This document shows, piece after piece, positions 917 to 42,084 of a DNA stretch of 64,000 nucleotides. A program made the translations under genes and the position numbers. Each line of letters starts with the position of its first letter. Position 1 is the first letter of the stretch. Under the pieces are notes generated by a model that saw nothing but the letters and a program-made list of their open reading frames with translations, did not search any database and was not told the origin of the DNA. The stretch spans positions 248,001 to 312,000 of the IMG/VR virus record IMGVR_UViG_3300047319_001872; one strand, given 5' to 3'.

Positions 917-2053
917 ATGGCTGATCCATACAACATAACTGTAGACGACATCCTGACGGCGGCCTCAACTGGTCAATCCGTTTCCGATATGGTCGATCAA
1001 GTTTTCCAGCTTGGACCGGCAGGCTCGTTTGATACAGCCATTGGTAACACCGTGTTCGGGCTGAACCATCGGCAACAACCTCCGGCGATCCTCAGCAATC
1101 GTGACCATTACGGGTATACGTTCTTTACGCGTCCCCGCATGAACATGACTGATGAGAACCTTCGGACACAGCGTCGTTTTGGTCCGCTGCTCTCGCAGCA
1201 GGATTACAGCTGGCAACGCGCCGTGCGCTGCACGCTTGACCCCGAGCTCGCCTGGGCAGACACGCCCGTGACGTGTTCACTGGTGGACCGGCAACAAGCG
1301 TTCATACCAATTCTCTCGAACACCCTCCTGTCCATGTCAGGGTGGCCGGACCTGGAAGCCCAGACATTCACCGCGCATGAAGGCATATACAAGGAGTCCT
1401 TCAGCATCGTGGATAGCGTGGTCGACAGGTATGAGACATACGATATAACCGCCAATTTCCGGAACCTGCCGGGCGATCCTGTCACGTTGATGATGATGTC
1501 GTGGCTCTTTTACGAGTCCTACGTCTACCTCGGCGAGCTCGTGCCGTATCCGGACATGCTGATCAATAACGAGATCGATTATCAGACCCGGATTTACCGC
1601 CTGGTGATGGACCCGGATAAGCGGCGTGTGCAAGGCATTGCAGCGTGCGGTGCAGGCTTTCCGGTGACCTGTCCGATTGGGGCGAAGTTTAACTTCGAGT
1701 CGGATCAGCCGTTGAATAAGAACATGGATCAAATCAGCGTGACCTTCCGCTGTGCGGGTGCCATGTACAACGACGACATCCTGATTGATGAATTCAACCG
1801 GACGCAGGCGCTGCACAATAACAACATGCACCCGAGTAACTTCTCGGGCTTTGGACAGAATACGACCAATCCGAATTATCGGCTGCTTCAGCTTAACGAG
1901 GTGGAGCTCTTTAACCACACCGGTTATCCACGCATCGACCCGGTCACCTACGAGTTGCAATGGTGGGTCGATAAGACCACTTACGGGCGCATGCTGCCGA
2001 CACTGAATTACCAGCAGGGGTTGATTCAACGCCTCGCTTCCCCGACGAGCTAA
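917..2053 (+). CDS. Virion structural protein, tail-tube/baseplate-like (phiKZ gp88 equivalent)
   Basis: 378 aa. Motifs YTFFTRPRMN, ITANFRN, IDYQTRIYRL and QISVTFRC resemble chimallivirus tube-fold structural proteins. Lies next to the baseplate gene. Confidence 0.65.
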   Translation: MADPYNITVDDILTAASTGQSVSDMVDQVFQLGPAGSFDTAIGNTVFGLNHRQQPPAILSNRDHYGYTFFTRPRMNMTDENLRTQRRFGPLLSQQDYSWQRAVRCTLDPELAWADTPVTCSLVDRQQAFIPILSNTLLSMSGWPDLEAQTFTAHEGIYKESFSIVDSVVDRYETYDITANFRNLPGDPVTLMMMSWLFYESYVYLGELVPYPDMLINNEIDYQTRIYRLVMDPDKRRVQGIAACGAGFPVTCPIGAKFNFESDQPLNKNMDQISVTFRCAGAMYNDDILIDEFNRTQALHNNNMHPSNFSGFGQNTTNPNYRLLQLNEVELFNHTGYPRIDPVTYELQWWVDKTTYGRMLPTLNYQQGLIQRLASPTS

Positions 2054-2064
2054 AGGAATAGAAC

Positions 2065-4974
2065 ATGGCTGCAACCATCAGCGCATTGCTCTCGAACATG
2101 CAGAACTACCAGAATAACCCTGCGTTGATTCAGCAGGACATTCTGGACCACCTGGACATAGTCACCAGCGGTGAAGTCAATATCGTCGACCCGTCCAACC
2201 CCTTTGTGTTCGGACTGGAGTCAGCGACCGTGTGCACCGCGGGCATGATGAGCAAGAGCGATACCAATACGCGACGTCAGTATCCGCAGTTGGCACAAAC
2301 CCCGGAAGACCTGTATTACCACATGTCGGACTGGGACTACATCAACCGGTTTGCCGCCCCTTCGGTGGCGCTCTTTTCCTTCATCTTCGATAAGGATGAG
2401 TTGATCTCCAAGCTGGTGACTGACCCCGCGACCGGGGTGTCCCAGATCGTGATCCCACGCAACACCGTGGTGATGATTTCGGGCGTGCAGTTTAGTCTGC
2501 AGTACCCGATCGTGATTCGCCAGATGCAACACGGTGGTCTGAATGTGACGTATGACGGCAGCGAGCCGTCGCCGTTGCAGGAACTGACCTCCAATGTGAT
2601 CGACTGGGAAATCCGCACGGTCAATGGCACGAACTGGCTCTTCTTTGATGTGCCACTGTACCAGTTCAATATCCTGTCCACGCAGCAAGGGGTGGTGCTC
2701 GCTACCAAGTGGCAGACCACCATCAGCTTTAGCGACCAGTTCTACTATGCTCGCGTGTGGGCTGAAAACAGTGACGGCACCTGGACTGAACTGCTCACGA
2801 CGCATTCGATCGAAGTCTACGATCCGACCACGCCGACCGCAGTCCTGCAAGTGGTGAACCAGACGCTCACGGTCACGATTCCGCAGATCTATATCACTAG
2901 CGGGCAGGTGAAGACGTCGGTGCGGGTGGACCTGTATCAGACCAAGGGCGACATCAACATGGATCTGTCGTCGTATCCGCAGAGCGCCTATTCGGCGAAC
3001 TGGCTGGCGATCGATGCGAACGACAATCTGCCGACCAACTTCTCGGCACCGCTGAAGGGCTTTAACCAGCTGGCGATCTGGTCCAATGATCGGACCGTGG
3101 ATGGCAATAACGGGCTGACGTTCAGTCAGCTGCGTCAGCGCGTGATGACCAACTCGACCGGTGCGCAGAACCTGCCGATCACCAACGTGCAGGTGCAAGC
3201 GGCATTGCAGAACATCGGCTACGATGTGGTCGAGAATGTGGATAACATCACCAACCGGGTGTTCCTGGCCACACGTGCGATGCCGGACCCGACCAACCCG
3301 GCCTTGATTACGTCTGCGGCGGCTTCGATCGAGACACTCTCGACGACACTTACCGCGCTGACGACACTCGAGTCGGTGATCAATAACGGTAACTCACTCA
3401 CGATCACGCCGGACACCATCTACCAGAGCACCAGTGGTGTGGTGAGCGCGGTGCCCACCGCAGCTGTGAAAGCGTTGCTGGCTCTGCCACCGGATCAACG
3501 GGCACTGGCTGTCACCAAAGGGCAGTACTTCTACTCACCCTGGCATTACGTGCTGGATAACACGGGACCGGAGTTTGAAGTGCGCCCGTACTATTTGGAT
3601 GCGCCGCTCGCGGACACCACGTTCTTTGTCTCGGAGAATGATACGACGCTCTTGCAAGTGAGCACCAAGAGCTACCAGATCACCAAGAACGCTGACGGCT
3701 CAGGCTATACGCTCACGATCAGTACGTCGTCCAACGATGGCTGGAAAGCCCTGGCCGATGACAAGGTGTATGTGCAGCTCGCTTACATCCCGGAAGGCGA
3801 GAGCGGGTATGCTTACCTGATGGGCACGCTGGTCGGGACCAACACCAGCACCAACGAGCGGACCTTCTCGTTTGATCTGTCGTCGAACTTCAATGTCGAC
3901 TCCAACGACATGTTGCAGTTGAAGAAGTTCCTGATGTACACGACCGATCCGATGCTCACTGCCTGTAGTCTCACGCAAACGTTCGAGATTCTGTACGCCG
4001 CGGACGCTGTGATGGATACGCAGTGGAAGCCGGGTGAGATCGACGCGATGCTCGGCATGTTCCTCTTGCCTGCAACCGCGGTGGGTGTGACGCACGAGCA
4101 AATCCGCGTGAAGTTCGGCTCTTCGTTGACGACACTCTGGGCATCGACGCGTACGGTGAATGATGCGGTCACCTATCGGACTTGGCCGATGGACGTGCTC
4201 TCGTACTACACGAACGATGTGTATGGCGACCCGGCGGTGACGATTGTCAATGGTCAGCTGGTGCAAAACATCGTGCACCGTGCAGGCGACCCGGTGATTA
4301 ATCCGGCAACGGGCCAACAGGTCTTGCTGCATGCGACAGGCGATGTGATGAGGGACGTGGATGGCAAGCCGATTCCGATCGGCACGCAAGACACTCTGCG
4401 TCAGATTGACCTGATGTTGCTTGAAGGCGTGTACTGGTTCGCTACCGATGCGATTGCCACGGGCTACCGCACTGAGCTGGTGGATACGGTACTCGCCTGG
4501 TTGACGGAAGACCTGGTGAGCTTCCAGGCGAGGTTGCTGGAGCAGACCCGTATCTACTTCTATCCGAAGGCGACCACGGGGAACATCAACGTGATGATCA
4601 ACGGGGGCTTGAAAACCACCGTCGCAGCTGGTCAGTCGTTTAAGATCACGCTCTATGTTCCGGCTTCCGTCTACAGCAACAGCGATCTGCAGAATCAACT
4701 GGTCAAGACCACGATCAGCACGATCTCGACGCAGCTGGAGAATGCAACCGTCGCCGATTCGGCGCTGAAGGTAGCGCTGATGAAGATCTACGGCGAGGAT
4801 GTGATTGACTGTGAAGTCGCGGGTCTGGGTGGCTCGGGCTCGATCTCGGTGATGACGGTGATTGATGCATCGAACAAGCTCAGCATCCGTAAGCGTCTCT
4901 TTGCCCAGTCGGATAACAGTCTGATTGTTCAGGAAGACGTGAGCGTCAACTTCATCCAGCATCAGCTGAGCTAA
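2065..4974 (+). CDS. Large baseplate (wedge-like) protein (phiKZ gp87 equivalent)
   Basis: 969 aa, beta-rich. N-terminal DPSNPFVFGLES and YYHMSDWDY motifs recalled from jumbo-phage baseplate proteins. RBS AAGGA upstream. Confidence 0.7.
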   Translation: MAATISALLSNMQNYQNNPALIQQDILDHLDIVTSGEVNIVDPSNPFVFGLESATVCTAGMMSKSDTNTRRQYPQLAQTPEDLYYHMSDWDYINRFAAPSVALFSFIFDKDELISKLVTDPATGVSQIVIPRNTVVMISGVQFSLQYPIVIRQMQHGGLNVTYDGSEPSPLQELTSNVIDWEIRTVNGTNWLFFDVPLYQFNILSTQQGVVLATKWQTTISFSDQFYYARVWAENSDGTWTELLTTHSIEVYDPTTPTAVLQVVNQTLTVTIPQIYITSGQVKTSVRVDLYQTKGDINMDLSSYPQSAYSANWLAIDANDNLPTNFSAPLKGFNQLAIWSNDRTVDGNNGLTFSQLRQRVMTNSTGAQNLPITNVQVQAALQNIGYDVVENVDNITNRVFLATRAMPDPTNPALITSAAASIETLSTTLTALTTLESVINNGNSLTITPDTIYQSTSGVVSAVPTAAVKALLALPPDQRALAVTKGQYFYSPWHYVLDNTGPEFEVRPYYLDAPLADTTFFVSENDTTLLQVSTKSYQITKNADGSGYTLTISTSSNDGWKALADDKVYVQLAYIPEGESGYAYLMGTLVGTNTSTNERTFSFDLSSNFNVDSNDMLQLKKFLMYTTDPMLTACSLTQTFEILYAADAVMDTQWKPGEIDAMLGMFLLPATAVGVTHEQIRVKFGSSLTTLWASTRTVNDAVTYRTWPMDVLSYYTNDVYGDPAVTIVNGQLVQNIVHRAGDPVINPATGQQVLLHATGDVMRDVDGKPIPIGTQDTLRQIDLMLLEGVYWFATDAIATGYRTELVDTVLAWLTEDLVSFQARLLEQTRIYFYPKATTGNINVMINGGLKTTVAAGQSFKITLYVPASVYSNSDLQNQLVKTTISTISTQLENATVADSALKVALMKIYGEDVIDCEVAGLGGSGSISVMTVIDASNKLSIRKRLFAQSDNSLIVQEDVSVNFIQHQLS

Positions 4975-4976
4975 TC

Positions 4977-5261
4977 ATGGATACGGAACTCAAACCTGTG
5001 TTCGTGAAGACGATGCCACCGGAGTTGGAGCAGGGCGTGCTTTACGTGTCAGAGGAGTACGAGCTGGCGATCCATCTGTGTGCGTGCGGGTGGTGCAAAG
5101 AAAAGACCGTGACACCGTTCAAAGACTTCCCGAACGATCGCGGCTGGACCTACGCACGGGACGCAGAGGATCGCGTGACGTTGCATCCTTCCATCGGGAA
5201 TTTCCAGATGCCTTGCAAATCGCACTACTGGGTGCGGGAGAACAAGATCGTCTGGTGTTAA
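4977..5261 (+). CDS. DUF6527 family protein (Cys/His-rich, putative Ubl-processing peptidase)
   Basis: The 94-aa pattern P-x-x-L-E-x-G-V-L-Y-V-S...A-I-H-L-C-A-C-G...V-T-P...W...T-L-H-P-S-I-G-N...C-K-S-H-Y-W-V...I-V-W matches my recollection of the DUF6527 consensus along its whole length. Confidence 0.8.
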   Translation: MDTELKPVFVKTMPPELEQGVLYVSEEYELAIHLCACGWCKEKTVTPFKDFPNDRGWTYARDAEDRVTLHPSIGNFQMPCKSHYWVRENKIVWC

Positions 5262-5303
5262 CGGCATAAGGCCCAGGGGGAAACCCCTGGGCTCTATGAC
5301 GCG
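5261..5303. terminator. Hairpin between convergent genes
   Basis: GCCCAGGGG-GAAA-CCCCTGGGC, flanked by CATA...TATG. Confidence 0.7.
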
Positions 5304-5304
5304 T

Positions 5305-6822
5305 TTACGAGGCTTTGAAGAGGTTCTTCACCGCACTGGCAGCGTGGCGTTGCCGCATGCGCTCAGCCTGCTTAGCGAGCGCCTGGATGGCTTCTGGGGC
5401 CTTGCTGTCATGCGAGGACACTTCCAGGTCCCGATAGATCGCTACCGCAAGTCGATAAGCAAAACCGGTCACGCGGGCCGCCATGGTTTCCACGATGGAA
5501 CGGTACGCATTCATGCGGTTTGCAATCATCGACAGGTCGCGCACATCCTGACGCACCGAGTCCAGCGCTTCACGCATTTCCGAGGCCATCGAGTGCTCCG
5601 GCATGTCTTCGGCGCCATCGGTCAAGATATTGCCAATCCCGACTTCGAGCAGATCCAGCCACTTCTCGATGGTGAGCAAGCGAAAAGCGACATCCCGGCC
5701 GGTTTCGATCAGCTTCTTGGTCGGTCCCGTCGAAAGGGCTTGCGCCATCGAAGCGAACACCATCTCAAACGAAAGCGCCAGATGCGGCTCGCCTTCGCTG
5801 GCCTGCAGGTAGATGTGGTTGTAGTTCGACGCCACATCCTGCAGATTCATCTGACGACCCTGAAAGCTCACCTGCACGCGCTGGTTCAGCACATCCAACG
5901 TGCGGCCTGCGATGAGCTGATCGGCAAACGAGGTCGAGCCCTTATTGGCCAACACGCCCGAGAGCGCGGTAGCTTTCTGGTTCATCACCGAGAGCGCTTG
6001 CTCCATGGTGTCAACGAGGGCTTCGGTGGCTTGTGACCACGGACCGTTATCAACGATGTCGTGAAAGATCGGGTTACGACCTTCCATGAACTGACGCACT
6101 TCGTCACTGGCTTCGGTGTCGTACAGATAGTGCGCGACCAGCTTATCGAAGTCACTGACATGTTGGCTCTGGCCGTGCTGGTCTTTCAACTCGACGCCGC
6201 GTTTGATTTCCTTTACGGCGGCTGAGGCGAGGCTCTTGAGCTCCTCCAGATCCTTGACGATCTCGTCGGCGCGGTACTCCTGCTGCTTGGCGGACTGCGT
6301 GACTTCTGCCAGGATCTGCTCATTGGACTTGCTCATGAGCTTTTCGTTCGGGTCCCGCGAACCCACGAGCCAGAGCACGAAGCGCCGGATCATTTCGCGA
6401 ATGCGCCGAATGAGATCGGCGAAGGTGCTCTTCAGCTTATCCCACAGCGACTCCATCGCGGGCTTGTAGCGCGTGAGGGTGGGTGACTTGCTGTAGTAGT
6501 TCAGGTGCTTATTGCCGTCGAACTCGGGGTAAAGACGCTTGGCTTCCTGGGCGAAAGACTGGTTCATACCGCCGACCTTTTTCAGGTCGGCGAGTACGTA
6601 CTGGAGATCTTCCAGGCAGGCGGACTCCGCCGCGATGATCCTCAGGTCGTCTTTGAGCTCGGGCACTTCACCCGGCACGACTTCCTTAAAGATGTCATGC
6701 GCGGTGAGCTCATCCATGACGGCCACATCAGGCAAAGACTTCACCTCAACGATGTCATCGCCAAGCGTTGCTTCTTCGTCGAGTTCGACCCCGTGATTGA
6801 GGCCGAATTCCGACAGGTCCAT
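5305..6822 (-). CDS. Virion inner-head protein, probably proteolytically processed (phiKZ gp86 equivalent)
   Basis: Start reassigned to ATG 6822 (MDLSEFG..., TAATG overlap with the upstream stop). Acidic N-terminal propeptide with AAES and AMES motifs, helical body. Confidence 0.65.
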   Translation of the reverse strand: MDLSEFGLNHGVELDEEATLGDDIVEVKSLPDVAVMDELTAHDIFKEVVPGEVPELKDDLRIIAAESACLEDLQYVLADLKKVGGMNQSFAQEAKRLYPEFDGNKHLNYYSKSPTLTRYKPAMESLWDKLKSTFADLIRRIREMIRRFVLWLVGSRDPNEKLMSKSNEQILAEVTQSAKQQEYRADEIVKDLEELKSLASAAVKEIKRGVELKDQHGQSQHVSDFDKLVAHYLYDTEASDEVRQFMEGRNPIFHDIVDNGPWSQATEALVDTMEQALSVMNQKATALSGVLANKGSTSFADQLIAGRTLDVLNQRVQVSFQGRQMNLQDVASNYNHIYLQASEGEPHLALSFEMVFASMAQALSTGPTKKLIETGRDVAFRLLTIEKWLDLLEVGIGNILTDGAEDMPEHSMASEMREALDSVRQDVRDLSMIANRMNAYRSIVETMAARVTGFAYRLAVAIYRDLEVSSHDSKAPEAIQALAKQAERMRQRHAASAVKNLFKAS

Positions 6823-7277
6823 TACGCGTGCTCCGTCACCGAGATGATGGTCATCGCTTCGCGCACGAGATTGAAGATCTCGTCCTTGTGGTCGTTGACG
6901 AACTGGTGCATGTCGTCCGCAAGCCAGAGCGTAGCACCCGCCCAGCAATCGACGAAGCCGAGCTTGGCTTCCACGTTATACTGCAGGCCCGGATAAGCCG
7001 CCGAGTAACGCAGCAGCCAGAAAGCGCGCATGGCTTCACGGCAGTAGCGCGTGTCGAACACCACTTCTTCGTTGAAGTCCGCGATGTAGTTCGAGGCACC
7101 CAGTGCGACTTGGGTGAGGAAGTAGTTGCTCGGTTCGACTTCGAGCGCCAGCGACGGCAGGCCCAGCTTGTTGGCAATCGCGATACCGACGGCTGCGCCG
7201 ATAATCTTGCCGCGCTCGCTCGGGTCCTTGATATAGGTGTCGGCGTAGCGGGAGAAGCCCAGAAACTTGATGTCCAT
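6822..7277 (-). CDS. Conserved hypothetical protein in the head-protein block
   Basis: 151 aa, translationally coupled to the downstream gene, phage-like codon usage. Confidence 0.7.
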   Translation of the reverse strand: MDIKFLGFSRYADTYIKDPSERGKIIGAAVGIAIANKLGLPSLALEVEPSNYFLTQVALGASNYIADFNEEVVFDTRYCREAMRAFWLLRYSAAYPGLQYNVEAKLGFVDCWAGATLWLADDMHQFVNDHKDEIFNLVREAMTIISVTEHA

Positions 7278-8710: not shown

Positions 8711-9028
8711 ATGCTACAAATGTTGTTGGAATGGTTGCGTAGTCTGCCACTGGATCAGTGCAATGCCTGTCTGGAACTCGCGGGGGCGGGGCTTCGGATG
8801 CTGGACTGTTACCGGCTCTACCAAGCCAAACGATTCGTAGGAGGATCGATTTTTACGGCCCTGTTCTTTTTTGGCTGGGGCATGTTCAATGTGGTGTATT
8901 ATCCGTCGTTGCACCAGGTCTATAGCTTTGCGGCAGCCCTTGCGCTGACAGCTGTGAACGGCCTGTGGATTGTGATGGCGGTGTTTTATAATTGGCGTTA
9001 CAACAAACAACAGGGTCTATCAGCATGA
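8711..9028 (+). CDS. Small 3-TM membrane protein, PQ-loop/SemiSWEET-like
   Basis: 105 aa with three hydrophobic segments. The pattern LELAGA...RLYQAK...G.S...FFFGWG.FN..YYPSL.Q..SF resembles single-repeat PQ-loop proteins. ATGA overlap with the polymerase gene. Confidence 0.55.
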   Translation: MLQMLLEWLRSLPLDQCNACLELAGAGLRMLDCYRLYQAKRFVGGSIFTALFFFGWGMFNVVYYPSLHQVYSFAAALALTAVNGLWIVMAVFYNWRYNKQQGLSA

Positions 9029-10998
9029 GCGAAGCTACGAACCTTCAGGCAGCGGAAAAGCCGATCGGCTACGAATGCCGGTTCGCTGTGTATTGCCCGC
9101 CGCAAAATGGCAGTGAAGATGACTGGCATTTGGTAAAAGAAATCGCCCACTATGCCCCGAGCCCGGCGCATCCTGAAGGGCGTCGCGAACCGCGCACACG
9201 GCTCGTGAAGAATTACACGTATCCCTTCTACGTTACCAAGAAGGGCGGTCGTAACCACGAGCAGAAGAAAGAGTGGGAAGAGCTCACCATGCTCGATCGC
9301 TTTGAGTCCACCCGCAGTAAGCGCGATCGGGCAATTGCCAAAGCCCTCGGCATGGGTTGGTTCCAGGGTGACCCGCGTCAGTTAGCCCGCAGTCCTTACC
9401 TGTACGGCTCGGACATTCTGTCGACCGCGGTGCTCAAGAAGACGTATCAGCAGAAGTGGCCTAACCTGATGTCCGGGTATTCGGTGGCCTGCTTCGATAC
9501 GGAAAAGGATGTCGTCTACGGCACTGAAGAAATCAACATGGCGACGCTCTCCTTCGGCAAGAAGGTGTTCACCGCTGTGCAGAAGTCGTTCGTGGAAGGG
9601 CTCTCGAATGTACAAGAGCGCGCCCACGAGACCTTCAAGAAGTATCTGTCCGCGATTGACATGAAGGACAAGAAGGGTGAACCGATCACGGTAGACGTGA
9701 TTGAGAAGCGCGGGCTCGAGTGGGAACTCGTTATCGTGGATCGCGAGATCGACGTGATTGTCGAGTGCATGAAGAAAGCGCATGAGTGGAAGCCCGACTT
9801 CGTGGCGATCTGGAACATCGACTTCGACATGCAGATGATGGTCAAGGCGTGTGAGCGTGCCGGTTACGATCCCGCCCACATCTTCAGTGATCCGTCGGTG
9901 CCGCCTGCGTTTCGGCACTTTAAGTACAAGCAAGGTCAGAAGCAGAAGAAGACGGCTTCGGGCAAGCTCACGCCGATTAAACCGGCTGACCAGTGGCACA
10001 GTGTCTTTACCCCGTCGTCGTTTTACTTCATTGACGCGATGTGCGTGTACCGGAAGATCCGAATTGCCAAAGGGGAAGAACCGTCCTACGCCCTGGATGC
10101 GATTCTGGATAAGATCCTCGGGGCGCGCAAGCTCAAGTTCAAAGAAGCCGAGCAGTACACCAAGCTGGAATGGCACCAGTTCATGCAGCTGAACTTCAAG
10201 CTCGAGTATATCGTCTACAACGTGTTTGACTGCGTGTCGATGGAAATGCTCGATGAGACCACGCTCGACTTACAGGTGGCCTTGCCCGGTGGTTCAGGTT
10301 GTTCGGACTTCAGCAACTTTAAGAGCCAGCCGCGTCGTACGGTGGATGACTTGCATTACTTTGCGCTCGATTTGGGCTTAGTGATTGGGTCGACCTCCGA
10401 TGAGATGCAAGTCGATCTGGATAAGCTGACGCTCGGCCTGGAAAACTGGATCGTCACCTTGCCTGCGCATTTGGTGGCGGACAACGGACTCAAGCTGATC
10501 GAGGAGTATCCGGAACTGCGTACCAACATCCGCGTGCACGTGGCGGACTTGGACGTGTCGGCGTCGTACCCGAATGGCGAGGTGGTGTTTAACATTGGCA
10601 AGTGTACCACCAAGAAGGAACTGTGTCGGATCGAAGGAGTACCCGAACAGTTGCAACGTGCGCAGGGTATTAACTTGTCGGGCGGTCACACCAACGCGGT
10701 CGAGTTCTGTGTGGACTTGTATGGGTTGCCTCACATGGAACAGTGGCTTACCGCCTTCCGTCAAAGTCGTGGGATTCCAGTGGTGCGGGATGCCCTGGAG
10801 GATGCAGACCTCGCCAAGATCCAAGCCTGGATTGCACGTGGTGAAACGCTGAATCCGGTGGAACACCTGCCGAATCAGAAGCGTCTGGAAATGACCTTGC
10901 CGGGTGCACACCGTGAGCTGGATGCCGATGGCAACTGGATCGACCTGACAGGCGTTGACGGCGAAGAAGGCACGGCACTGCAACTCGAGCTGGCATAA
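9025..10998 (+). CDS. Split family-B DNA polymerase, exonuclease plus motif-A subunit (phiKZ gp82 equivalent)
   Basis: Exonuclease motifs FDTEKD, WNIDFD and YNVFDC. Pol-B motif A as DLDVSASYP. Start taken at ATG 9025. Confidence 0.85.
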   Translation: MSEATNLQAAEKPIGYECRFAVYCPPQNGSEDDWHLVKEIAHYAPSPAHPEGRREPRTRLVKNYTYPFYVTKKGGRNHEQKKEWEELTMLDRFESTRSKRDRAIAKALGMGWFQGDPRQLARSPYLYGSDILSTAVLKKTYQQKWPNLMSGYSVACFDTEKDVVYGTEEINMATLSFGKKVFTAVQKSFVEGLSNVQERAHETFKKYLSAIDMKDKKGEPITVDVIEKRGLEWELVIVDREIDVIVECMKKAHEWKPDFVAIWNIDFDMQMMVKACERAGYDPAHIFSDPSVPPAFRHFKYKQGQKQKKTASGKLTPIKPADQWHSVFTPSSFYFIDAMCVYRKIRIAKGEEPSYALDAILDKILGARKLKFKEAEQYTKLEWHQFMQLNFKLEYIVYNVFDCVSMEMLDETTLDLQVALPGGSGCSDFSNFKSQPRRTVDDLHYFALDLGLVIGSTSDEMQVDLDKLTLGLENWIVTLPAHLVADNGLKLIEEYPELRTNIRVHVADLDVSASYPNGEVVFNIGKCTTKKELCRIEGVPEQLQRAQGINLSGGHTNAVEFCVDLYGLPHMEQWLTAFRQSRGIPVVRDALEDADLAKIQAWIARGETLNPVEHLPNQKRLEMTLPGAHRELDADGNWIDLTGVDGEEGTALQLELA

Positions 10999-16232: not shown

Positions 16233-16273
16233 ACGGCATAGAGGGAGGACCGTAGTCCTCCCAGGCTTTATGC
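16233..16273. terminator. Hairpin downstream of the endolysin gene
   Basis: GGCATA-GA-GGGAGGAC-CGTA-GTCCTCCC-AGGCTT-TATGCC. Confidence 0.65.
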
Positions 16274-17116
16274 CCCGTAGAGCTGAGTACATGCCCCGTA
16301 GTTGCTGGCCATCTTGGTGTCGTACTGGTTCGCCGCGTAGTTCGGACCGTTGTAGACCTTCGCAAAGAGGGCCCAGTTACGTGCCTTCAAGGCGGTCTGC
16401 AATTGACCACTTGCGTACTTCTGGCAAAACGAGACGAACGCCATCAGGTGGGTATCTTCAGACTTGCGCATCGCCGTCACAAAGGAGCCAACATCAGCAT
16501 AACCACAGAACGAGAAGTTCTCGCCCATGATCTGGAAAAGTCCCCAGGAAGCGGACATCATCGCACAGTCCTGGTCGATCGCAAATGCCCGGTTAAAGCG
16601 CGGGTACTCACCCGCCCCACCCGAGTAGCCACCCGACTGCGGATTGCAGATGTCGCTGTTGCCTGCTGCCATCAACTTATTGACCTGGGCCTGGCCGTAC
16701 TTCTTCACCAGATAGCCGTAGAACTTGTGGCGCTCAAAGAGGATGATACAGCGACCATCAGGCAAGAAGCCCGCACCACTGGTTTCGGTCATGCACACGG
16801 CGCGCACCGCAGACTGACCAATCCCGAGCAATTGCGCGGCATCTACATAGTCCGGCGTTTGCAGATACTTGCCCGTGATAAACGCATCCAGCAGATTCTG
16901 GGTTGAGGCGTCGTAAAGACCCGAGGCCGGAATGCCTTGCTTGGTCTGGTATTGGGTGAGCGCAGTAATCGAGAGCGGCCCAAAGTTACCGTCCGGTTTT
17001 AGCGGCGGCGTGATGCCCTGTTTTTCATTCAGTGCTTTCTGAATGCCCTTGGTGTAATCGATGTCAAACTGGTTCGGTACTGCAGCACCCAGCTTCACCG
17101 GTGTGATCAGCGTCAT
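16268..17116 (-). CDS. Modular endolysin: peptidoglycan-binding domain plus DUF3380-type N-acetylmuramidase
   Basis: N-terminal PDGNFGPLSITALTQYQ...GLYD (PG-binding). Catalytic domain with AVCMTETSG, ILFERHKFY, SASWGLFQIMGEN and FAKVYNGP. Start taken at ATG 17116. Confidence 0.9.
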   Translation of the reverse strand: MTLITPVKLGAAVPNQFDIDYTKGIQKALNEKQGITPPLKPDGNFGPLSITALTQYQTKQGIPASGLYDASTQNLLDAFITGKYLQTPDYVDAAQLLGIGQSAVRAVCMTETSGAGFLPDGRCIILFERHKFYGYLVKKYGQAQVNKLMAAGNSDICNPQSGGYSGGAGEYPRFNRAFAIDQDCAMMSASWGLFQIMGENFSFCGYADVGSFVTAMRKSEDTHLMAFVSFCQKYASGQLQTALKARNWALFAKVYNGPNYAANQYDTKMASNYGACTQLYGA

Positions 17117-17214
17117 CCCTACTCCCTTAACGTAATAGAACCCCCGAGGCATGGAACCCCGCTATAGGATTCCATGACCTCGAGGGCACTATGCCGCTAA
17201 AGCAGCCGTATTAC

Positions 17215-19964: not shown

Positions 19965-21341
19965 TTACTGGATGGCTGTCTTGTAGTCCATGTGAGCGAG
20001 CGCGAGCTGCGTGCCGTGCATCTTCTTCATGAACAAGAGCATGAACTTCGAACCGTATTCCGAGACTGCTGAAGAGAGTGCGGTGGGATTCATCGACAGA
20101 CGCGGACCCACGCACACGGCGCAGTAGTCGGTCTTTTCGAGTCGACAGAACATCGGTGAGCGAATCATCACCTTCTTGCCGAGGTAGTTGCCAATGGATT
20201 CCTCGGTGAGCTTTTCGCTCCCGCCATCGGTCACTACACTAAAGCCCATGTACTTCTTCTTGTTCTCGTCCGAGAGCGCGACCGGATTACCCAGGGTCGA
20301 GTGACAGTCTTCTTGCGTGACCATCATGTTCGACGAAGCACGCAGCAGCCACTTCACGGCTTCACCGCCGAGCATGGTTTCAGCACCCCGGTTGTACGAA
20401 CCGGCCCGCAGCGAATCGTTCATGATCGGGAACTTGTTGATGTCCCAGCCTTCTGACAGCGAGTTCTGGATGAGGTCCACATCAATGCCATCGTCCAGAC
20501 CCGCTTCTGCACCCGTCATCAGGAAGAGCTTACGTCGCACCACCTTACGGGACTTGTTCTCGATCAAGAAGCCTTCAGCATCGTCGCCCTTCAGGTACTC
20601 AGAGTCGAACTTAATCAGCTCGGCGTCGATCTTCGCAATCACCGCCGGATCATGCAGCTTATCCTTGTACTGCTCAAGCAACTGCGCTTTAAGCTCCGCC
20701 AAGCCAGGGGGTGCGGTCATGGCTTTGCGGGTAGCGGCCGGGACCCACAGTTGCGTGAAGCCTGCCAGGTAGAAAGCGGCGTCCGCCATCACCAGGTACT
20801 CTTTCACGTAGATGGGTTGCTTGCGTGGATCACCCAGATCCAGCACGGGCGAACCCGTCTGATCCGCGACTGCCGCATTGGCGGCGAGCACCATCTGGGC
20901 ATTGGGGGTCGGATCATCCTGCAGGCGCGGTAGCACCATCTTCTCGATCGCCCCTGGGCTAATACGGCCCGAGAGGTAGGGGATCTTGTTGCCGAAGGGG
21001 TAGGCGACAATCACCCAGTTAAAGAAGTACTGGCCGTAACTGGTGGGGTGCGGGGTCGACTCCGTGTAGTTCGGAATCTGTCCGGCTTGCAGCAGGAACT
21101 GGTCCTTGCGATTAAACGGTGCGATCGTAGGATCACAGCCTTCCAGCGGCAGGAGTTCGTTCGTGTTCTCCGGATTGACAAAGAAGTACCCCGTGCGTGT
21201 TTGCACGATCCGATACGGGTACATGTCTTTCTGGTAGTCTTCCGGGCCCTCGTTGATGATGGAGAACGCGGAGATGACCCACGCACGGCGCCGGAATAAC
21301 CCTGCGTTCATCGCCGCGATAAAGTAGTCGTGTTTCTTCAT
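19965..21341 (-). CDS. Virion RNA polymerase beta'-like subunit (phiKZ gp80 equivalent)
   Basis: 458 aa. Beta' C-terminal Zn-site motifs QEDCHST, IRSPMFC and YCAVCVG, plus GAETMLGG. Confidence 0.8.
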   Translation of the reverse strand: MKKHDYFIAAMNAGLFRRRAWVISAFSIINEGPEDYQKDMYPYRIVQTRTGYFFVNPENTNELLPLEGCDPTIAPFNRKDQFLLQAGQIPNYTESTPHPTSYGQYFFNWVIVAYPFGNKIPYLSGRISPGAIEKMVLPRLQDDPTPNAQMVLAANAAVADQTGSPVLDLGDPRKQPIYVKEYLVMADAAFYLAGFTQLWVPAATRKAMTAPPGLAELKAQLLEQYKDKLHDPAVIAKIDAELIKFDSEYLKGDDAEGFLIENKSRKVVRRKLFLMTGAEAGLDDGIDVDLIQNSLSEGWDINKFPIMNDSLRAGSYNRGAETMLGGEAVKWLLRASSNMMVTQEDCHSTLGNPVALSDENKKKYMGFSVVTDGGSEKLTEESIGNYLGKKVMIRSPMFCRLEKTDYCAVCVGPRLSMNPTALSSAVSEYGSKFMLLFMKKMHGTQLALAHMDYKTAIQ

Positions 21342-30828: not shown

Positions 30829-32859
30829 TTAACCCATCCCGAGTACTTCGACGGGGCAAATCAATGCGTCCATCGGGTGATCCGGGCGGTTCTTCTTCGT
30901 GTAGCTTTCCGGCGAGATGAACACGTCGTAGTGACCTTCGTACGCCATCGTTGCCGAGAGCGAGCGTCGATCCATGGTCATGTCCATCACACCCAAGCCG
31001 CGATCCGTCCACGGCTTCGGCAGGCGATAGTCATCTTCTTCTGCGCTGATGATCATCGCCCCGTACAGCACGACTTCCAGCACCGCCAGATTGACAGTGA
31101 GTTTGTCGTTCACGAGGTTGTACAACTCGACCAAGAACGCGTCGGGTGACACGTCCTTATCCCGCGCTTCCATCTGCTTCTTACTCGACTCCAGCATCGA
31201 GGCGATGTCTTTCGAGTGATCGCTCATGTTGAAGTGAATCAGCGGCAGCGTCATCACAGGCTCATTCCAGTCCCAACCCGTCATGTCAATGACGTAGTCG
31301 TTATTGGCATTGAAGTCCCAGCGCACCTTGCGGATATGGCGCAGCATCGGATAGGTGAGCGAGGCGAGGCGCCGATCCTTGGAGGTATTGACACGCTCCG
31401 GATCGAACTCCACATTGCCCTCTTTCACCTGCACCGCGATTTCCCGCATCTCCGACACCTGTCGGATGTTCAGGTCATCGATGCTGTGGTTAGCCAACAC
31501 GTCGGTAATGTTCGGGGCGAACATCGCCGGAATGATCAGCTTCACCGTCTTGCCCTTGAGTCGATCGGCAAGCAGATACGACATGCCATCGGCACTGATC
31601 TTGAAGAACTTCTTCTCATCAGGCGTCAGGCTTGCCGGTTCTACAGCGGCCGAACTATCCAAGTGCTTAACCGACAGCACGGACTGCGAGGACTTCTGCG
31701 TCATCGAGGTGCAACACATGTGACCCAAGTTGGTCCGATCGTCCAGTACGGACAGGCTGAGTTCACCGAAACAGGTGGCACACACCCCATACGGATCAGG
31801 ATGCGCGCAGTGAATCACCGAGCGCAGCCGAATACTCTTGCCGATCAGATTCTCTTGGTCGTACTTGTCGCCACGAATCACCCGCAACCCGCCGGTCTTC
31901 TCGTCGACATAGAACTTGCCGAGGAGCAGAGGCAGGTCACCACCGAAGACTTCATCGCCTTCCTCGTTCACTTCCTTACCCCGCACTTGCCAGCGCAGGG
32001 TTTCGGTCGTGCCACAGTCGCAATTCTGGTGCAAGTTGCGCACCGTCTGACACATCAGCTGCAAGCGGCGGGAGAAATACTCCGCTTCCTGCAACGGCGA
32101 CTTCGAGAACTGCAATGCCTTCGCTGCCGAGCGCGACTCAATCACCGAGTCGTACAGACTGCGAATCCCTTCGACGTAGCCAGGGATGATCGGATAGCGG
32201 AACTGGTCCGAGTCGATGTCGGTCAGATAACCGCGCGGCCCGATCGACTGCTGCACCTGGTTGGCATTCACGAGCTTGGAGCGCAGCGCCAGCGACACTG
32301 CGTTCAGCGGCAAGTCCTGGCCATTGCCGAGCACATCATCGATCACGCCATAGGCTTCCTTGATCATGCGACCGCCTTCGTCCGGGGTCTTGTTGACCGC
32401 GTCCTTGACCTTTTCCTTCATCGCGATGATCTTCGGATGATCGAGCACTTCCATCCAGTCCAAGATGTCCATCGAGCCCACATCGGCTTCGCACCGATAG
32501 CTCATCTCGTTGTAGATGATGTTGTTCAGCTGATAAATACGCTGCGCCAACACATCGCGCCCGACCGCATCGCCGTAGATCTCGTAGACCGACCACATGC
32601 AATTGCCCAACAGATCGAGTGGCGTACTCGCGCTGTACCGCTTCTTGCCCAACACGCCGTCGATATGGTGGTGTTTGAGCAGCGGGGTTTTGCCCCACTG
32701 CCGATGGAACTCCCACGCATACGACGAGATCACTGTCTTGCGCCAGTTGGTTTCCAACTCCTGGTTGTCGTCGAAGATCAGAATGAACCGCCCCGTGAGG
32801 GTGTCCCACAGGTCATCGGTGGTCATCGCGAGCAACTTCCTGGCCCGGATCTTAATCAT
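30829..32859 (-). CDS. Non-virion RNA polymerase beta'-like subunit (phiKZ gp74 equivalent)
   Basis: ESRSAAKAL, EYFSRRLQL, NCDCGT, RSVIHC and GVCATCFG beta' motifs. Confidence 0.85.
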   Translation of the reverse strand: MIKIRARKLLAMTTDDLWDTLTGRFILIFDDNQELETNWRKTVISSYAWEFHRQWGKTPLLKHHHIDGVLGKKRYSASTPLDLLGNCMWSVYEIYGDAVGRDVLAQRIYQLNNIIYNEMSYRCEADVGSMDILDWMEVLDHPKIIAMKEKVKDAVNKTPDEGGRMIKEAYGVIDDVLGNGQDLPLNAVSLALRSKLVNANQVQQSIGPRGYLTDIDSDQFRYPIIPGYVEGIRSLYDSVIESRSAAKALQFSKSPLQEAEYFSRRLQLMCQTVRNLHQNCDCGTTETLRWQVRGKEVNEEGDEVFGGDLPLLLGKFYVDEKTGGLRVIRGDKYDQENLIGKSIRLRSVIHCAHPDPYGVCATCFGELSLSVLDDRTNLGHMCCTSMTQKSSQSVLSVKHLDSSAAVEPASLTPDEKKFFKISADGMSYLLADRLKGKTVKLIIPAMFAPNITDVLANHSIDDLNIRQVSEMREIAVQVKEGNVEFDPERVNTSKDRRLASLTYPMLRHIRKVRWDFNANNDYVIDMTGWDWNEPVMTLPLIHFNMSDHSKDIASMLESSKKQMEARDKDVSPDAFLVELYNLVNDKLTVNLAVLEVVLYGAMIISAEEDDYRLPKPWTDRGLGVMDMTMDRRSLSATMAYEGHYDVFISPESYTKKNRPDHPMDALICPVEVLGMG

Positions 32860-32888
32860 TACATCCTCCTTGTTTCATGATCCGTTAA

Positions 32889-35114
32889 TTAAGCGGCCAG
32901 TTTCTGGCGCGGCGTGTAACCTTGTTCGGCCTGCTCGTACACGAACTTCCAGCCGCCGCATTGCGCGACGTGCCGTACGAGTTGGAGCGGCTTGGAACCG
33001 CCCAGTGGCACGATGCTACGATCGACCACCTTCTCGATCCCGGTAGGTTTGTCGGCCCGCAGGATTTGCTCGAGGATATGCTTGTGCGTGAACGGATTGT
33101 TGTTGCGATCCAGAATGTCGGCCGTAATGCGTGCGCCTGCATACGACACGGCAATCCGAACTTCCGCCTCACCCCAGGCCCGAATCGCCTGCGTACGCGT
33201 GGGCGCTGCGTACTTGTCGGCATTGGTAACCTGAGAAAGCACCCCAAAGTGCTGCAGCTTACCCGAGGACACCGCCGTCCAGTCATCAGCGATCTTTTCC
33301 AGGATGATGATGTAGACCGAAGCAATCCGCACTGGCTTCTTGGTCACCACCTTCTTGCCTGAGTTGCCGGTATATGCTACCGGACCATACACAGGCGGAT
33401 ACTGCTCCTGGATCGCCCGCACCATCGGGATATACGCCGGGTCGTTTTCCGGTGGCATGAAGAGCTGCAAGCCATCTGCATTCTCAATCGTGCCGTCGTG
33501 GTGCTTGATGATGTGGATCACACTGGCTAAGTGCTCGACGCGTGGGCGCGTATACGAGCCCGTCATGAACCAGCTATGTTGCAACGGGCTCACGATGGCA
33601 TAATAGCCCATCAAGTACTCCCAGACTTCGTCGATCAGCTGGGGCTGTTCGATTTCCATCTGTGCCAGCTTCTTCGTGAGCATGTACTCCGGGTCGGTGC
33701 GATCCACCCCGAGCTTTGCCACGATGCGCTTCATCACGTCACGCGAAGCCGCATTGATGTAGGGCTCGTACAGACGACCGTAATTCATGCGGTTCACGGT
33801 GGACTCACCCGAGACGATGATGTCCGCGCGATTGCCATGTTCGTCGATCGGCATTTCATGCGGTTCGCAGATCTTGCAGATCACACCCTTGCCGCCGAAG
33901 CAGTCCGTCAGCTTAAAGCCGATGGTCGGGGTGATTTCATACTCGATCACGAATTCCACCCGCCAATCATCGAGCGGGGCCTGACGATAGAGCTTCTTGA
34001 TGGATTCGCTCGGGCTGGCGCTGTTCTTGCCGACCACACTGAGGGCTTCCACCACCAACCGATGAAACTCCGGCGACAGCCGCGGCTTGCCATCGGCATA
34101 CTTCGACTTCTGGGAGTTATACAGCTGGATGATTTCCTGATAGAACTCGCGCCGAGCGCGGTCATACCGGGAAGGCTGCGTGTCCATGCCTTCGGGCACA
34201 TTGGTGTTCTGGTTATTCGCATCGTGATGCACGCGAATGTCCACCACCTTGCCGCCAGTCGGCACATAAGTCGCCTTGTCGAACGTGAAGTCCGGACGCC
34301 GCAACGCCGCTGCCGACTGTTCCACCACGGCCAGACTTTCGTCGTAGCTGCGCAGCATCATCAGCAACCCATCTTCACGCACCATTTCGCCGATGTCCGG
34401 AAACGACTTGTACTTCTTATAGTCGCCATACAGGTTCAGCGGAAAGCGCTTGCTGCCCCACTCGACCACGCGGGTTTCATACGTCTTGAAGCTGAAACGA
34501 TCCAGCACGTCGCGCGAGATCACGATGCCGTCCTCAGCCACGCCCGGAATCGACATGTAGGCCACGTTACACTGCACGCCGTACTTGTAGTCACCATCCG
34601 CAGTCACAGACGGGGAATCCAAGAACACCTCACCTTCTTGGATTTCCGCGCCTTGCACCAGCTTACCGCGCGCCGGGCGACTCACAAACGGAAAACCGAA
34701 ATACTGATGCTGTGAACAAAAGCGCGGCATGTTGATCATGCCGATTTCGCTGCCGCCTTCGGTGGTTTTGAAAATCACCACTTGTTGCGGATTTTGCCAC
34801 TGGTCCTGAATGATCGAATCCGCCCCGTAGCTGGTCCGATACCGGTCGATCACTTTCAACACCTGGCCCGTCTTGGGCATTTTCACGTTCCAGGTATACT
34901 TGCCAAACTCACGTTCCATGCCGGTCTGACAGTAACGTGGCGTCGCTCCTTTCACCACCAGCGTCTGACCGATGTGGCTGGAGAACATCTGCTCCCGCGA
35001 AGCAGAGTTGGCCCCCTTCCACGGATTCAACCCACACACACCCAACAGCTGCCGCAGAAGCTGATTAGGTTCCGGAAGCGGTTCATAGACCTTCCGTGCT
35101 GAATGAACGTTCAT
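32889..35114 (-). CDS. Non-virion RNA polymerase beta-like subunit (phiKZ gp71-73 equivalent), uninterrupted
   Basis: SREQMFSSH, EDGIVISR, GFKLTDCFGGKGVI, RMNYGRLYE and RAWGEAEVR motifs. Start taken at ATG 35114. Confidence 0.9.
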   Translation of the reverse strand: MNVHSARKVYEPLPEPNQLLRQLLGVCGLNPWKGANSASREQMFSSHIGQTLVVKGATPRYCQTGMEREFGKYTWNVKMPKTGQVLKVIDRYRTSYGADSIIQDQWQNPQQVVIFKTTEGGSEIGMINMPRFCSQHQYFGFPFVSRPARGKLVQGAEIQEGEVFLDSPSVTADGDYKYGVQCNVAYMSIPGVAEDGIVISRDVLDRFSFKTYETRVVEWGSKRFPLNLYGDYKKYKSFPDIGEMVREDGLLMMLRSYDESLAVVEQSAAALRRPDFTFDKATYVPTGGKVVDIRVHHDANNQNTNVPEGMDTQPSRYDRARREFYQEIIQLYNSQKSKYADGKPRLSPEFHRLVVEALSVVGKNSASPSESIKKLYRQAPLDDWRVEFVIEYEITPTIGFKLTDCFGGKGVICKICEPHEMPIDEHGNRADIIVSGESTVNRMNYGRLYEPYINAASRDVMKRIVAKLGVDRTDPEYMLTKKLAQMEIEQPQLIDEVWEYLMGYYAIVSPLQHSWFMTGSYTRPRVEHLASVIHIIKHHDGTIENADGLQLFMPPENDPAYIPMVRAIQEQYPPVYGPVAYTGNSGKKVVTKKPVRIASVYIIILEKIADDWTAVSSGKLQHFGVLSQVTNADKYAAPTRTQAIRAWGEAEVRIAVSYAGARITADILDRNNNPFTHKHILEQILRADKPTGIEKVVDRSIVPLGGSKPLQLVRHVAQCGGWKFVYEQAEQGYTPRQKLAA

Positions 35115-35220
35115 CTCGTACCTTTCCTTGTTGTAACGACCTACGCTATTACCCCGTCTGACTTCCACTAATGCACTCTTGCAATGCATTCGCAGAAATC
35201 ATTTGAGGCTCTTCGTATTA

Positions 35221-40352: not shown

Positions 40353-40388
40353 GGAGTGTATCCATTAAGCTATGCTACTGCCTGGCGC

Positions 40389-41156: not shown

Positions 41157-41211
41157 GATGCGTTTTCCTATTGGTTTTATGGTACTCAGACCATAGGTCG
41201 GGTGAATAAAT

Positions 41212-42066: not shown

Positions 42067-42084
42067 GACACATTCTCCTTGTTT

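What the first reader, a model, noticed from the sequence alone, without database searches (positions are those of the whole stretch)
4977..5261. Stand-alone DUF6527 gene coupled to the baseplate gene: candidate anti-defence deconjugase
Seen: a 94-aa gene starts 2 nt after the baseplate stop (TAAtcATG), shares the downstream hairpin, and interrupts an otherwise structural block. It keeps H33, C35, C37, C40, S72 (HPSIG), C80 and H83 (CKSHY). Known, from recall: DUF6527 genes normally occur in bacterial operons with ThiF/E1, E2 and multi-ubiquitin genes (Bub-type pathways, whose peptidase uses a Ser-His dyad). The related Bil system blocks phages by conjugating a Ubl onto tail proteins. No E1, E2 or Ubl gene is visible in this window. 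Inference: the phage captured only the eraser and expresses it late with the baseplate, to strip or pre-empt Ubl marks on virion proteins.
Basis: partly seen in the sequence, partly recalled or inferred. Interest (0 to 1): 0.85.

Follow-up and report, generated by a model that had tools for sequence, protein, structure and literature searches.

The report
Stand-alone BubE peptidase gene in phage
A nucleus-forming jumbo phage carries, right behind its baseplate wedge gene, a small intact copy of the peptidase that bacteria use to remove ubiquitin-like tags in their 'Bub' pathway. It has no tag or tagging enzymes of its own. Dozens of other phages carry the same trimmed-down gene, which makes it a plausible but untested counter-defence.

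Summary
ORF 4977-5261 (+) encodes a 94-aa protein that matches Pfam PF20137 (DUF6527, now named BubE) at E=1.9e-19. It keeps the zinc cysteines and the invariant Ser72/His83. It starts 2 nt after the stop of a phiKZ gp87-type baseplate wedge gene and is followed by a strong hairpin.

The window is a chimallin/PhuZ jumbo phage related to Burkholderia phage FLC9, which has the same gene at 71% aa identity. No E1, E2 or Ubl was found in the window or in three complete phage genomes that carry the gene.

In 61 of 63 viral loci the gene stands alone and ends about 10 residues after the domain. In 75 of 80 bacterial or archaeal loci it follows an E2-E1 gene and has a 30-80-aa tail. On a tree the stand-alone forms cluster, and a single clade is not rejected. 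dN/dS is about 0.05-0.07, and the AF2 model has pLDDT 96.

The gene's neighbours differ between phage lineages, so the baseplate link is specific to this clade. No evidence ties the gene to Bil.

The anti-defence reading is the best available but remains inferred. Bub itself has not been shown to block phages. I rate this a new variant of a known kind, of moderate to high interest.

The parts
4977..5261 (+). Stand-alone BubE (DUF6527/PF20137) gene, 94 aa. Zn site C35/C37/C40/C80; putative catalytic dyad S72/H83; no hydrophobic extension.
   Evidence: invariant H33 C35 C37 G38 S72 H83 Y84 across 140 homologs; dN/dS 0.05-0.07; AF2 pLDDT 96, eight beta strands.
4972..4979 (+). Stop/start junction TAAtcATG between the wedge gene and the BubE gene. 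A weak GAG lies 7-9 nt upstream of the ATG. The arrangement suggests translational coupling.
   Evidence: read directly from the sequence. Coupling itself is inferred.
2065..4974 (+). Baseplate wedge protein gene (phiKZ gp87 homolog), 969 aa.
   Evidence: 9xqs_A E=3e-182; 11lx and 36za chains named 'Baseplate wedge protein'; phrog_3248.
917..2053 (+). Tail-tube initiator-like gene (phiKZ gp88 homolog; Pfam Phage_TTP_15). It is the first gene of the + strand unit.
   Evidence: E=6.9e-113; 9xqs_I E=7e-58; 'Tail Tube Initiator Protein'.
5270..5293 (.). GC-rich hairpin with a 10-bp stem and GAAA loop, between the BubE stop and the stop of the convergent gene. It is a candidate bidirectional transcript end.
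   Evidence: dG -32.5 kcal/mol, z -6.85. Not flagged by the T-run terminator scan.
5305..6948 (-). Convergent gene, 547 aa, function unknown. It bounds the unit.
   Evidence: phrog_32764/29544, unknown function; no meaningful PDB relative.

Best explanation
The gene encodes a functional, minimal BubE-family Ser-His peptidase stabilised by a zinc site. It is an accessory gene of a nucleus-forming jumbo phage. It is probably co-transcribed, and perhaps translationally coupled, with the late baseplate genes. Its most likely job is to remove or pre-empt ubiquitin-like tags that host Bub-type E1/E2 pathways attach to proteins during infection, which would make it a phage deconjugase acting as counter-defence.

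Shown: family membership, intact catalytic and zinc residues, the predicted fold, purifying selection, absence of E1/E2/Ubl, loss of the hydrophobic extension, and wide distribution in phages as a separate group.

Inferred: peptidase activity of this protein, its Ubl substrate, late expression, and any effect on defence.
For: - Family and residues: Pfam PF20137 at E=1.9e-19. S72 and H83 are invariant across 140 homologs, with H33, C35, C37, G38 and Y84.
- Published biochemistry: BubE cleaves a BubA-GFP fusion and erases BubA conjugates in cells, and this depends on the Ser-His pair.
- Fold: the AF2 model has pLDDT 96 and eight strands, as in the published fold scheme.
- Selection: dN/dS is 0.05-0.07 in unsaturated pairs.
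- Context: 61 of 63 viral loci have no E1, E2 or Ubl within 6 kb, against 75 of 80 cellular loci with an E2-E1 gene directly upstream.
- Tails: about 10 aa after the domain in phage forms against 30-80 aa in operonic forms.
- Whole genomes: no Bub E2-E1 or BubA match in FLC9, pEa_SNUABM_29 or Dulem virus 40.
- Phylogeny: the stand-alone label changes 4 times on the tree against 49 in shuffles. A single stand-alone clade is not rejected (p-AU 0.71) and its constrained tree scores higher.
- Substrate class: column conservation in stand-alone and operonic sets correlates (Spearman 0.81), with the same 17 columns at >=90% in both. This suggests the same kind of substrate.
- Host family: Burkholderiaceae carry complete Bub operons, for example on the Ralstonia megaplasmid.
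- Regulation: Bub operons are controlled by DNA-damage or phage-responsive regulators.
Against: - Bub operons have not been shown to protect against phage.
- BubE activity in vitro is extremely weak, and its cognate Ubl families are very diverse. A single phage enzyme may not recognise host Ubls.
- No assay exists for any phage BubE.
- The host of this phage and its Bub status are unknown.
- Only 3 of 50,697 GenBank phage records carry the gene, so it is not a common need.
- I found no co-location with known anti-defence genes.
Confidence: 0.5

Rival explanations
1. It is a phage-intrinsic processing protease. The BubE fold would be used to trim a phage protein, such as a baseplate or tail component, or a host protein unrelated to Ubl conjugation.
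For: The 2-nt junction with the wedge gene in the window clade. In 39 of 51 non-redundant stand-alone loci the gene lies within 30 nt of a same-strand upstream gene. Catalytic residues are conserved.
Against: phiKZ and most relatives with the same gp87/gp88 baseplate genes lack it; only 3 GenBank phages carry it. Neighbours are unrelated across lineages and no partner family is conserved. FLC9 has another gene between wedge and BubE. The conservation profile is almost the same as in Ubl-specific operonic BubE.
Confidence: 0.2
2. It is a counter-measure against a different conjugation defence, such as Bil or CBASS Cap2-type conjugation, rather than Bub.
For: Bil tags a phage tail protein. [quoted passage not shown] Here the gene sits behind baseplate genes.
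Against: All known partners of the family are Bub Ubls. The Bil and CBASS erasers are JAB peptidases. Baseplate adjacency is clade-specific. No data point to Bil.
Confidence: 0.1
3. It is a non-catalytic binder or decoy. The small zinc protein would sequester a host Ubl or E1/E2 without cleaving anything.
For: Operonic BubE is a very poor enzyme in vitro and is predicted to bind the Ubl C-terminal domain. One viral pair (L036/L037) appears to lack the His.
Against: S72 and H83 are invariant or nearly so across phage forms, including the subclade that changed a zinc ligand.
Confidence: 0.08
4. It is a remnant of a phage-borne Bub operon, once used against competing phages, that has lost its E1, E2 and Ubl genes.
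For: Two viral contigs (L046, L047) carry complete operons. A degraded operon exists on a Paraburkholderia plasmid.
Against: Those two group with the cellular clade and keep long tails. The stand-alone forms are a separate, diverse, strongly constrained group. That pattern does not fit decaying remnants.
Confidence: 0.03

Closest known systems
BubE (DUF6527/PF20137) of Type I/II bacterial Bub operons (Ye et al., bioRxiv 10.1101/2024.11.21.623953; NSMB 2026)
   Same: Same Pfam family. Same C-x-C-x(1-2)-C...C zinc cysteines and the same invariant Ser and His. Same predicted eight-strand beta fold with no PDB relative. About 45-55% identity to operonic proteins.
   Different: No adjacent E1, E2 or Ubl. 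No hydrophobic N- or C-terminal extension: 94 aa against roughly 120-190 aa. One extra residue (W39) in the Cys cluster. Encoded by a virus. Groups with other phage forms apart from operonic ones.
JAB/MPN 'DUB' domains in siphophage tail-assembly proteins, speculated to be anti-Bil (Hor et al., bioRxiv 10.1101/2023.09.04.556158)
   Same: A phage-encoded Ubl-peptidase-type domain placed among tail or baseplate genes, with counter-defence proposed and untested.
   Different: Unrelated fold and chemistry (metalloprotease against a Ser-His dyad). A domain of a structural protein rather than a free 94-aa protein.
Negative-regulator peptidases of bacterial conjugation defences (BilC, CBASS Cap3)
   Same: Erasers of Ubl-like conjugates.
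   Different: JAB family, encoded in host operons, and acting as self-regulators rather than viral antagonists.
Deubiquitinases and deISGylases of eukaryotic viruses (my own knowledge, e.g. coronavirus PLpro, nairovirus OTU)
   Same: The concept: a virus carries only the eraser of a host tag-based antiviral pathway.
   Different: No homology, and function is demonstrated there but not here.

Membership tests
BubE / DUF6527 protein family (PF20137) | Profile match above Pfam's gathering score over the whole domain | tested here: met
   69.7 bits against 23.6, E=1.9e-19, profile positions 2-63 of 63. A local HMM built from operonic and phage members gives E=2.8e-40.
BubE / DUF6527 protein family (PF20137) | Four-cysteine zinc site (C57/C59/C61/C99 in Citrobacter BubE) | tested here: met
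   C35, C37, C40 and C80 align with the family cysteines, with one inserted residue (W39). Metal binding itself was not tested.
BubE / DUF6527 protein family (PF20137) | Invariant Ser-His catalytic dyad (S92/H102 in Citrobacter BubE) | tested here: met
   S72 and H83 are invariant in 140 homologs. Equivalence to S92/H102 rests on motif and spacing relative to the Cys residues, because I did not have the Citrobacter sequence.
BubE / DUF6527 protein family (PF20137) | Compact eight-strand beta-sandwich with no close structural homolog | tested here: met
   AF2 model with pLDDT 96, pTM 0.86 and eight strands. Foldseek against PDB gave a best E of 0.8. The one strong BFVD match is an 89-aa viral protein, 49% identical, TM 0.89.
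BubE / DUF6527 protein family (PF20137) | Flexible hydrophobic N- or C-terminal extension | tested here: not met
   The protein ends 11 residues after H83. Viral forms have tails of about 10 aa against 30-80 aa in operonic forms.
BubE / DUF6527 protein family (PF20137) | Peptidase or isopeptidase activity on the cognate Ubl | not testable with these tools
   Needs biochemistry. Only Citrobacter BubE has been assayed.
Bub operon (Type I/II bacterial ubiquitination-like pathway) | Co-encoded Ubl (BubA) and E1/E2 (BubBD or BubAB+BubCD) | tested here: not met
   No hits in the window at E<=10. None within 6 kb in 61 of 63 viral loci. No tblastn match to E2-E1 or BubA in FLC9 or the two other complete phage genomes.
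Phage anti-defence protein | Encoded by a phage as an accessory gene, not a core gene | tested here: met
   The window carries chimallin, PhuZ and phage RNAP genes. The gene is absent from most relatives and its neighbourhoods vary.
Phage anti-defence protein | Neutralises a defined host defence | not testable with these tools
   No assay is available. The presumed target pathway is itself not proven to be antiviral.

The most novel reading that the evidence does not exclude
Tail-less stand-alone BubE proteins would be a widespread family of phage 'deubiquitinase-like' counter-defence enzymes, enriched in jumbo phages, that strip Bub Ubl conjugates. Their existence would be the first evidence, from the virus side, that Bub pathways are antiviral. 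It would also be a prokaryotic parallel to the DUBs and deISGylases of eukaryotic viruses.
Probability: 0.4. Interest if true: 0.85.

Novelty: new variant of a known kind. Interest (0 to 1): 0.62.

Why it matters
The biological role of Bub pathways is open. Their discoverers state that protection against phage has not been demonstrated. A large, conserved group of phage genes encoding only the pathway's eraser is the kind of signature that has exposed other defence and counter-defence pairs. It supplies a direct test: does phage BubE erase BubA conjugates, and does it change plating on Bub-carrying cells?

There is also a practical point. Operonic BubE resisted structure determination, and truncating its extension gave insoluble protein. 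The natural 90-aa phage forms may be the tractable version of this new protease fold.

In the searchable literature only two works mention DUF6527 (four held copies), and neither I read in full mentions phage copies.

Tried and rejected
- Conserved partner gene: I clustered all neighbours of 72 stand-alone loci. Only lineage-specific synteny appeared.
- Upstream neighbours: Pfam on ten -1 neighbours gave unrelated families or nothing.
- FLC9 gp340: I tested whether this Cys/His-rich gene is a divergent BubE paralog. hhalign probability was 3%, so I rejected that.
- Hidden E1/E2/Ubl: searched with unfiltered HMMs in the window and the FLC9 region, and by tblastn of a Burkholderiales E2-E1 and a Ralstonia BubA against 50,697 phage genomes. 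These gave only two weak ThiF hits in an Acinetobacter phage and nothing, respectively.
- Structural relatives: PDB sequence search with the protein gave nothing meaningful, and Foldseek against PDB also found nothing.
- Terminator: the consensus scan did not flag the hairpin.
- RNA genes: no tRNA or Rfam match anywhere in the window.
- Published paper: the NSMB version of Ye et al. is not held, so I cannot exclude that it mentions phage homologs.

Full report
**The observation**

The ORF at 4977-5261 on the + strand is the first-ATG ORF in its frame and encodes 94 residues. The upstream gene ends with TAA at 4972-4974, then 'tc', then the ATG.

Pfam-A gives one hit, PF20137 DUF6527. It scores 69.7 bits against a cut-off of 23.6, E=1.9e-19, and covers the whole 63-position profile. 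Newer Pfam tables name this family BubE.

A 10-bp GC-rich hairpin with a GAAA loop lies at 5270-5293, between this gene and a convergent gene ending at 5305. The fold energy for 5255-5310 is -32.5 kcal/mol, z=-6.85. It has no T-run, so the consensus terminator scan did not list it.

**The surroundings**

The 969-aa gene upstream is a homolog of phiKZ gp87 (PDB 9xqs_A, E=3e-182) and of chains deposited as 'Baseplate wedge protein'. The 378-aa gene before it is the phiKZ gp88 / 'tail tube initiator' type.

The window also encodes the following genes:
- a nuclear-shell (chimallin) protein at 46688-48598 (-)
- a PhuZ-type tubulin at 62244-63248 (-)
- several phage multisubunit RNA polymerase pieces
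- a divergent family-B DNA polymerase at 54908-57037 (-)
- a second DNA polymerase at 8992-10998 (+)

It is a nucleus-forming jumbo phage. Its first 12 kb are about 75% identical in DNA to Burkholderia glumae phage FLC9, a 321-kb genome. The BubE protein is 100% identical to those encoded on two IMG/VR contigs of 172 and 313 kb.

The BubE gene does not interrupt a structural block. It ends the two-gene baseplate unit. The following convergent genes have no recognisable structural identity.

**It is a real gene under constraint**

FLC9 gp341 is 71% identical in protein and also matches PF20137. In pairs where synonymous sites are not saturated, dN/dS is low:
- window against L009: 0.054 (dS 0.47)
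- L009 against L010: 0.048
- the two Paraburkholderia copies: 0.074

An AlphaFold2 model built on a 140-sequence alignment has mean pLDDT 96 and pTM 0.86. It shows eight beta strands, which matches the published description of the DUF6527 fold as a compact beta-sandwich with strands 1-8. Foldseek found no PDB relative, best E 0.8. This agrees with the authors' report that no structural homolog exists. In the viral library the one strong match is an 89-aa viral protein, 49% identical with TM 0.89.

**What the family is known to do**

Ye et al. (bioRxiv 10.1101/2024.11.21.623953) renamed the '6E/DUF6527' operons Bub. These encode a Ubl (BubA), E1 and E2 activities that work through oxyester intermediates, and BubE, the DUF6527 protein.

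For Citrobacter BubE they reported a C4 zinc site (C57/C59/C61/C99) and an invariant Ser92-His102 pair. The protein slowly cleaved a BubA-GFP fusion, and cleavage depended on both residues. It also erased BubA conjugates in cells. They describe a hydrophobic N- or C-terminal extension, and removing it made the protein insoluble.

In my 140-sequence alignment the invariant columns are H33, C35, C37, G38, S72, H83 and Y84. C40, C80 and S82 are near-invariant. The phage protein therefore keeps the whole catalytic and metal-binding set. I equate S72/H83 with S92/H102 by invariance and spacing, not by direct alignment to the Citrobacter sequence, which I did not have.

**Stand-alone forms against operonic forms**

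I collected 63 loci from viral contigs and 80 from bacterial and archaeal genomes. I built local HMMs for BubA, the E2-E1 fusion and BubE by iterating from a canonical Type II operon (L006).

| Set | Loci | E2-E1 gene present | C-terminal tail after the domain |
|---|---|---|---|
| Viral contigs | 63 | 2 (61 have no E1, E2 or Ubl within 6 kb) | about 10 aa |
| Cellular genomes | 80 | 75, directly upstream of BubE | 30-80 aa |

The five cellular exceptions include a prophage-like region of Paraburkholderia with lysozyme, head-decoration, HNH, esterase and ligase genes. They also include a 245-kb 'MAG' contig that carries phage tubulin and a phage polymerase.

Other contexts confirm the picture:
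- an FLC9-like 326-kb contig with phiKZ inner-body genes
- a jumbo contig with polB, PhoH and ClpP genes
- a block of small genes in the 73-kb Dulem virus 40
- Erwinia jumbo phage pEa_SNUABM_29

Fourteen of the 63 viral loci lie on contigs of 200 kb or more.

An exhaustive phmmer search found 1,065 family representatives at E<=1e-3. Of the 148 newly returned representatives among the best 150, 51 are tail-less and 91 have tails longer than 25 aa.

**No hidden pathway in the phage**

HMM searches without filters at E<=10 found nothing for E1/E2 or Ubl in the window or the FLC9 region. A tblastn search with a Burkholderiales E2-E1 against all 50,697 phage records gave only two weak ThiF hits, both in an Acinetobacter phage. 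It gave none in the three complete genomes that carry BubE. A Ralstonia BubA gave no hit at all. I could not read the rest of the 313-kb source contig, so for this exact phage the check covers only 64 kb.

**Evolution**

On a maximum-likelihood tree of 148 domain sequences, the 'no E1' label needs only 4 changes, against a mean of 49 in shuffles. Fifty-two stand-alone rows lie on one side of a branch.

Constraining all 70 stand-alone rows to one clade gave a tree with higher likelihood than the free quick search (by 31.7 log units). The AU test does not reject it (p=0.71).

The alignment is short (87 columns) and the tree is unrooted. I therefore claim only that the phage forms are an old, diversified group distinct from operonic BubE. 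I make no claim about which way the gene moved. 'Captured' is thus not established.

Column conservation is highly correlated between the two groups (Spearman 0.81). The same 17 columns are at least 90% conserved in both. This argues that the active site and probably the substrate class are unchanged.

**Neighbourhoods**

Clustering all neighbours of the stand-alone genes showed no partner family shared across lineages. The wedge-BubE arrangement is confined to the FLC9-like clade, seven loci in all. In FLC9 and one metagenomic relative, a 213-aa Cys/His-rich gene sits between wedge and BubE. That gene is not BubE-like.

Elsewhere the upstream gene is DUF7484, a DNA methylase, a radical-SAM protein, an esterase/lipase or an unknown. 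In 39 of 51 non-redundant loci, a same-strand gene ends within 30 nt upstream. The gene therefore usually rides at the end of someone else's operon, which is typical of an accessory gene.

Late expression with the baseplate genes is a fair inference for this phage. It comes from the 2-nt junction and the single downstream hairpin, and it is not a general property of the family.

**Mechanism**

The best-supported reading is a minimal, soluble BubE that acts on host Bub-type Ubl conjugates or precursors. The only activity known for the family is Ubl-specific. The phages lack any Ubl of their own. The catalytic set is under strong constraint. The regulatory or membrane-associating extension is gone.

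The host family also carries complete Bub operons. The Ralstonia solanacearum megaplasmid has Ubl, E2-E1 and BubE genes, confirmed with my HMMs. For a nucleus-forming phage, whose DNA is shielded, a defence that tags cytoplasmic proteins would be one of the remaining threats. That last point is my inference.

Several facts weigh against this reading:
- BubE is a very slow enzyme in vitro, and BubA proteins are highly diverse.
- Only three GenBank phages carry the gene.

I put this reading at about 0.5. The rivals are a phage-intrinsic processing protease (0.2), a counter-measure to another conjugation system such as Bil (0.1), a non-catalytic binder (0.08) and a decayed phage-borne operon (0.03). 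The Bil idea has a published parallel only for JAB domains in siphophage tail-assembly proteins, and that too is speculation.

**Comparison and novelty**

By sequence, residues and predicted fold this is a member of the BubE family. It fails two features of operonic BubE: the hydrophobic extension and the operon partners. It is not part of a Bub system.

In the searchable library only two works mention DUF6527 or PF20137 (four held copies), and both come from the laboratory that described the family. The one I read in full does not mention viral copies. I could not read the journal version.

I therefore file it as a new variant of a known kind: a virus-borne, tail-less, stand-alone BubE group.

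**Verdict**

Interest is 0.62. The anti-defence function is plausible and readily testable, but nothing computed here demonstrates it.

Noticed in passing
L030, L031, L035-L038, L043, L045, L051-L053, L055, L057, L058, L061, L062, L064, L066-L068, L145 (BubE genes near position 6000 of each locus): A viral BubE subclade reads P-Y-H-A-H-Y where the family has P-C-K-S-H-Y. The fourth zinc cysteine is replaced by Tyr and a His appears one position later, which may make a C3H site. The Ser72 and His83 equivalents are kept. L036/L037 read PYHAYY and may lack the catalytic His.
   Followed up: partly
L030:3538-3825 and 6001-6273 (same in L031, L057): Some viral contigs carry two BubE genes about 2.2 kb apart.
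   Followed up: no
L001:8035-8676 (FLC9 gp340); L003:9360-10001; L029:10902-11306 (-): A 213-aa Cys/His-rich gene lies between the wedge gene and BubE in FLC9 and one relative. It is absent from the window. A homolog lies 4.6 kb from BubE in an unrelated 56-kb viral contig. It has no Pfam hit and is not BubE-like. Whether the recurrence means a functional link is unknown.
   Followed up: partly
L004:9201-10004; L013:4832-5632; also L011, L012, L071: In another jumbo-phage clade a DUF7484 gene (E=1e-86) overlaps the BubE start by 4 nt.
   Followed up: partly
L071 (JARLJL010000015.1, 245 kb, 'Sulfuriferula MAG') and L004: A contig binned as a bacterial MAG carries phage tubulin, a divergent phage DNA polymerase and stand-alone BubE. 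It looks like a jumbo phage genome.
   Followed up: partly
L152 (Paraburkholderia graminis plasmid pPHS1_P), around 4772-5375: A BubE gene with a long tail sits next to only a short remnant of the E1 gene, beside HigB, ImmA/IrrE and AbiE genes. This looks like a decaying Bub operon in a defence island.
   Followed up: partly
window 46688-48598 (-), 62244-63248 (-), 19965-21341 (-), 30829-35189 (-), 54908-57037 (-), 8992-10998 (+): The window carries the hallmarks of a nucleus-forming jumbo phage: chimallin, PhuZ tubulin, split multisubunit RNA polymerase genes and two different DNA polymerase genes.
   Followed up: yes
window 40356-42140: The longest ORFs here have atypical codon-position GC (GC3 about 0.5, or GC1 about 0.3 with GC2 0.5-0.6). 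Neighbouring genes have GC3 above 0.7. These ORFs may be miscalled, or the region may be non-coding. No tRNA or Rfam family was found anywhere in the window.
   Followed up: no
window 16268-17152 (-): A muramidase with a peptidoglycan-binding domain, likely the endolysin or a virion lysozyme. It is syntenic with the FLC9-like contig L003.
   Followed up: no
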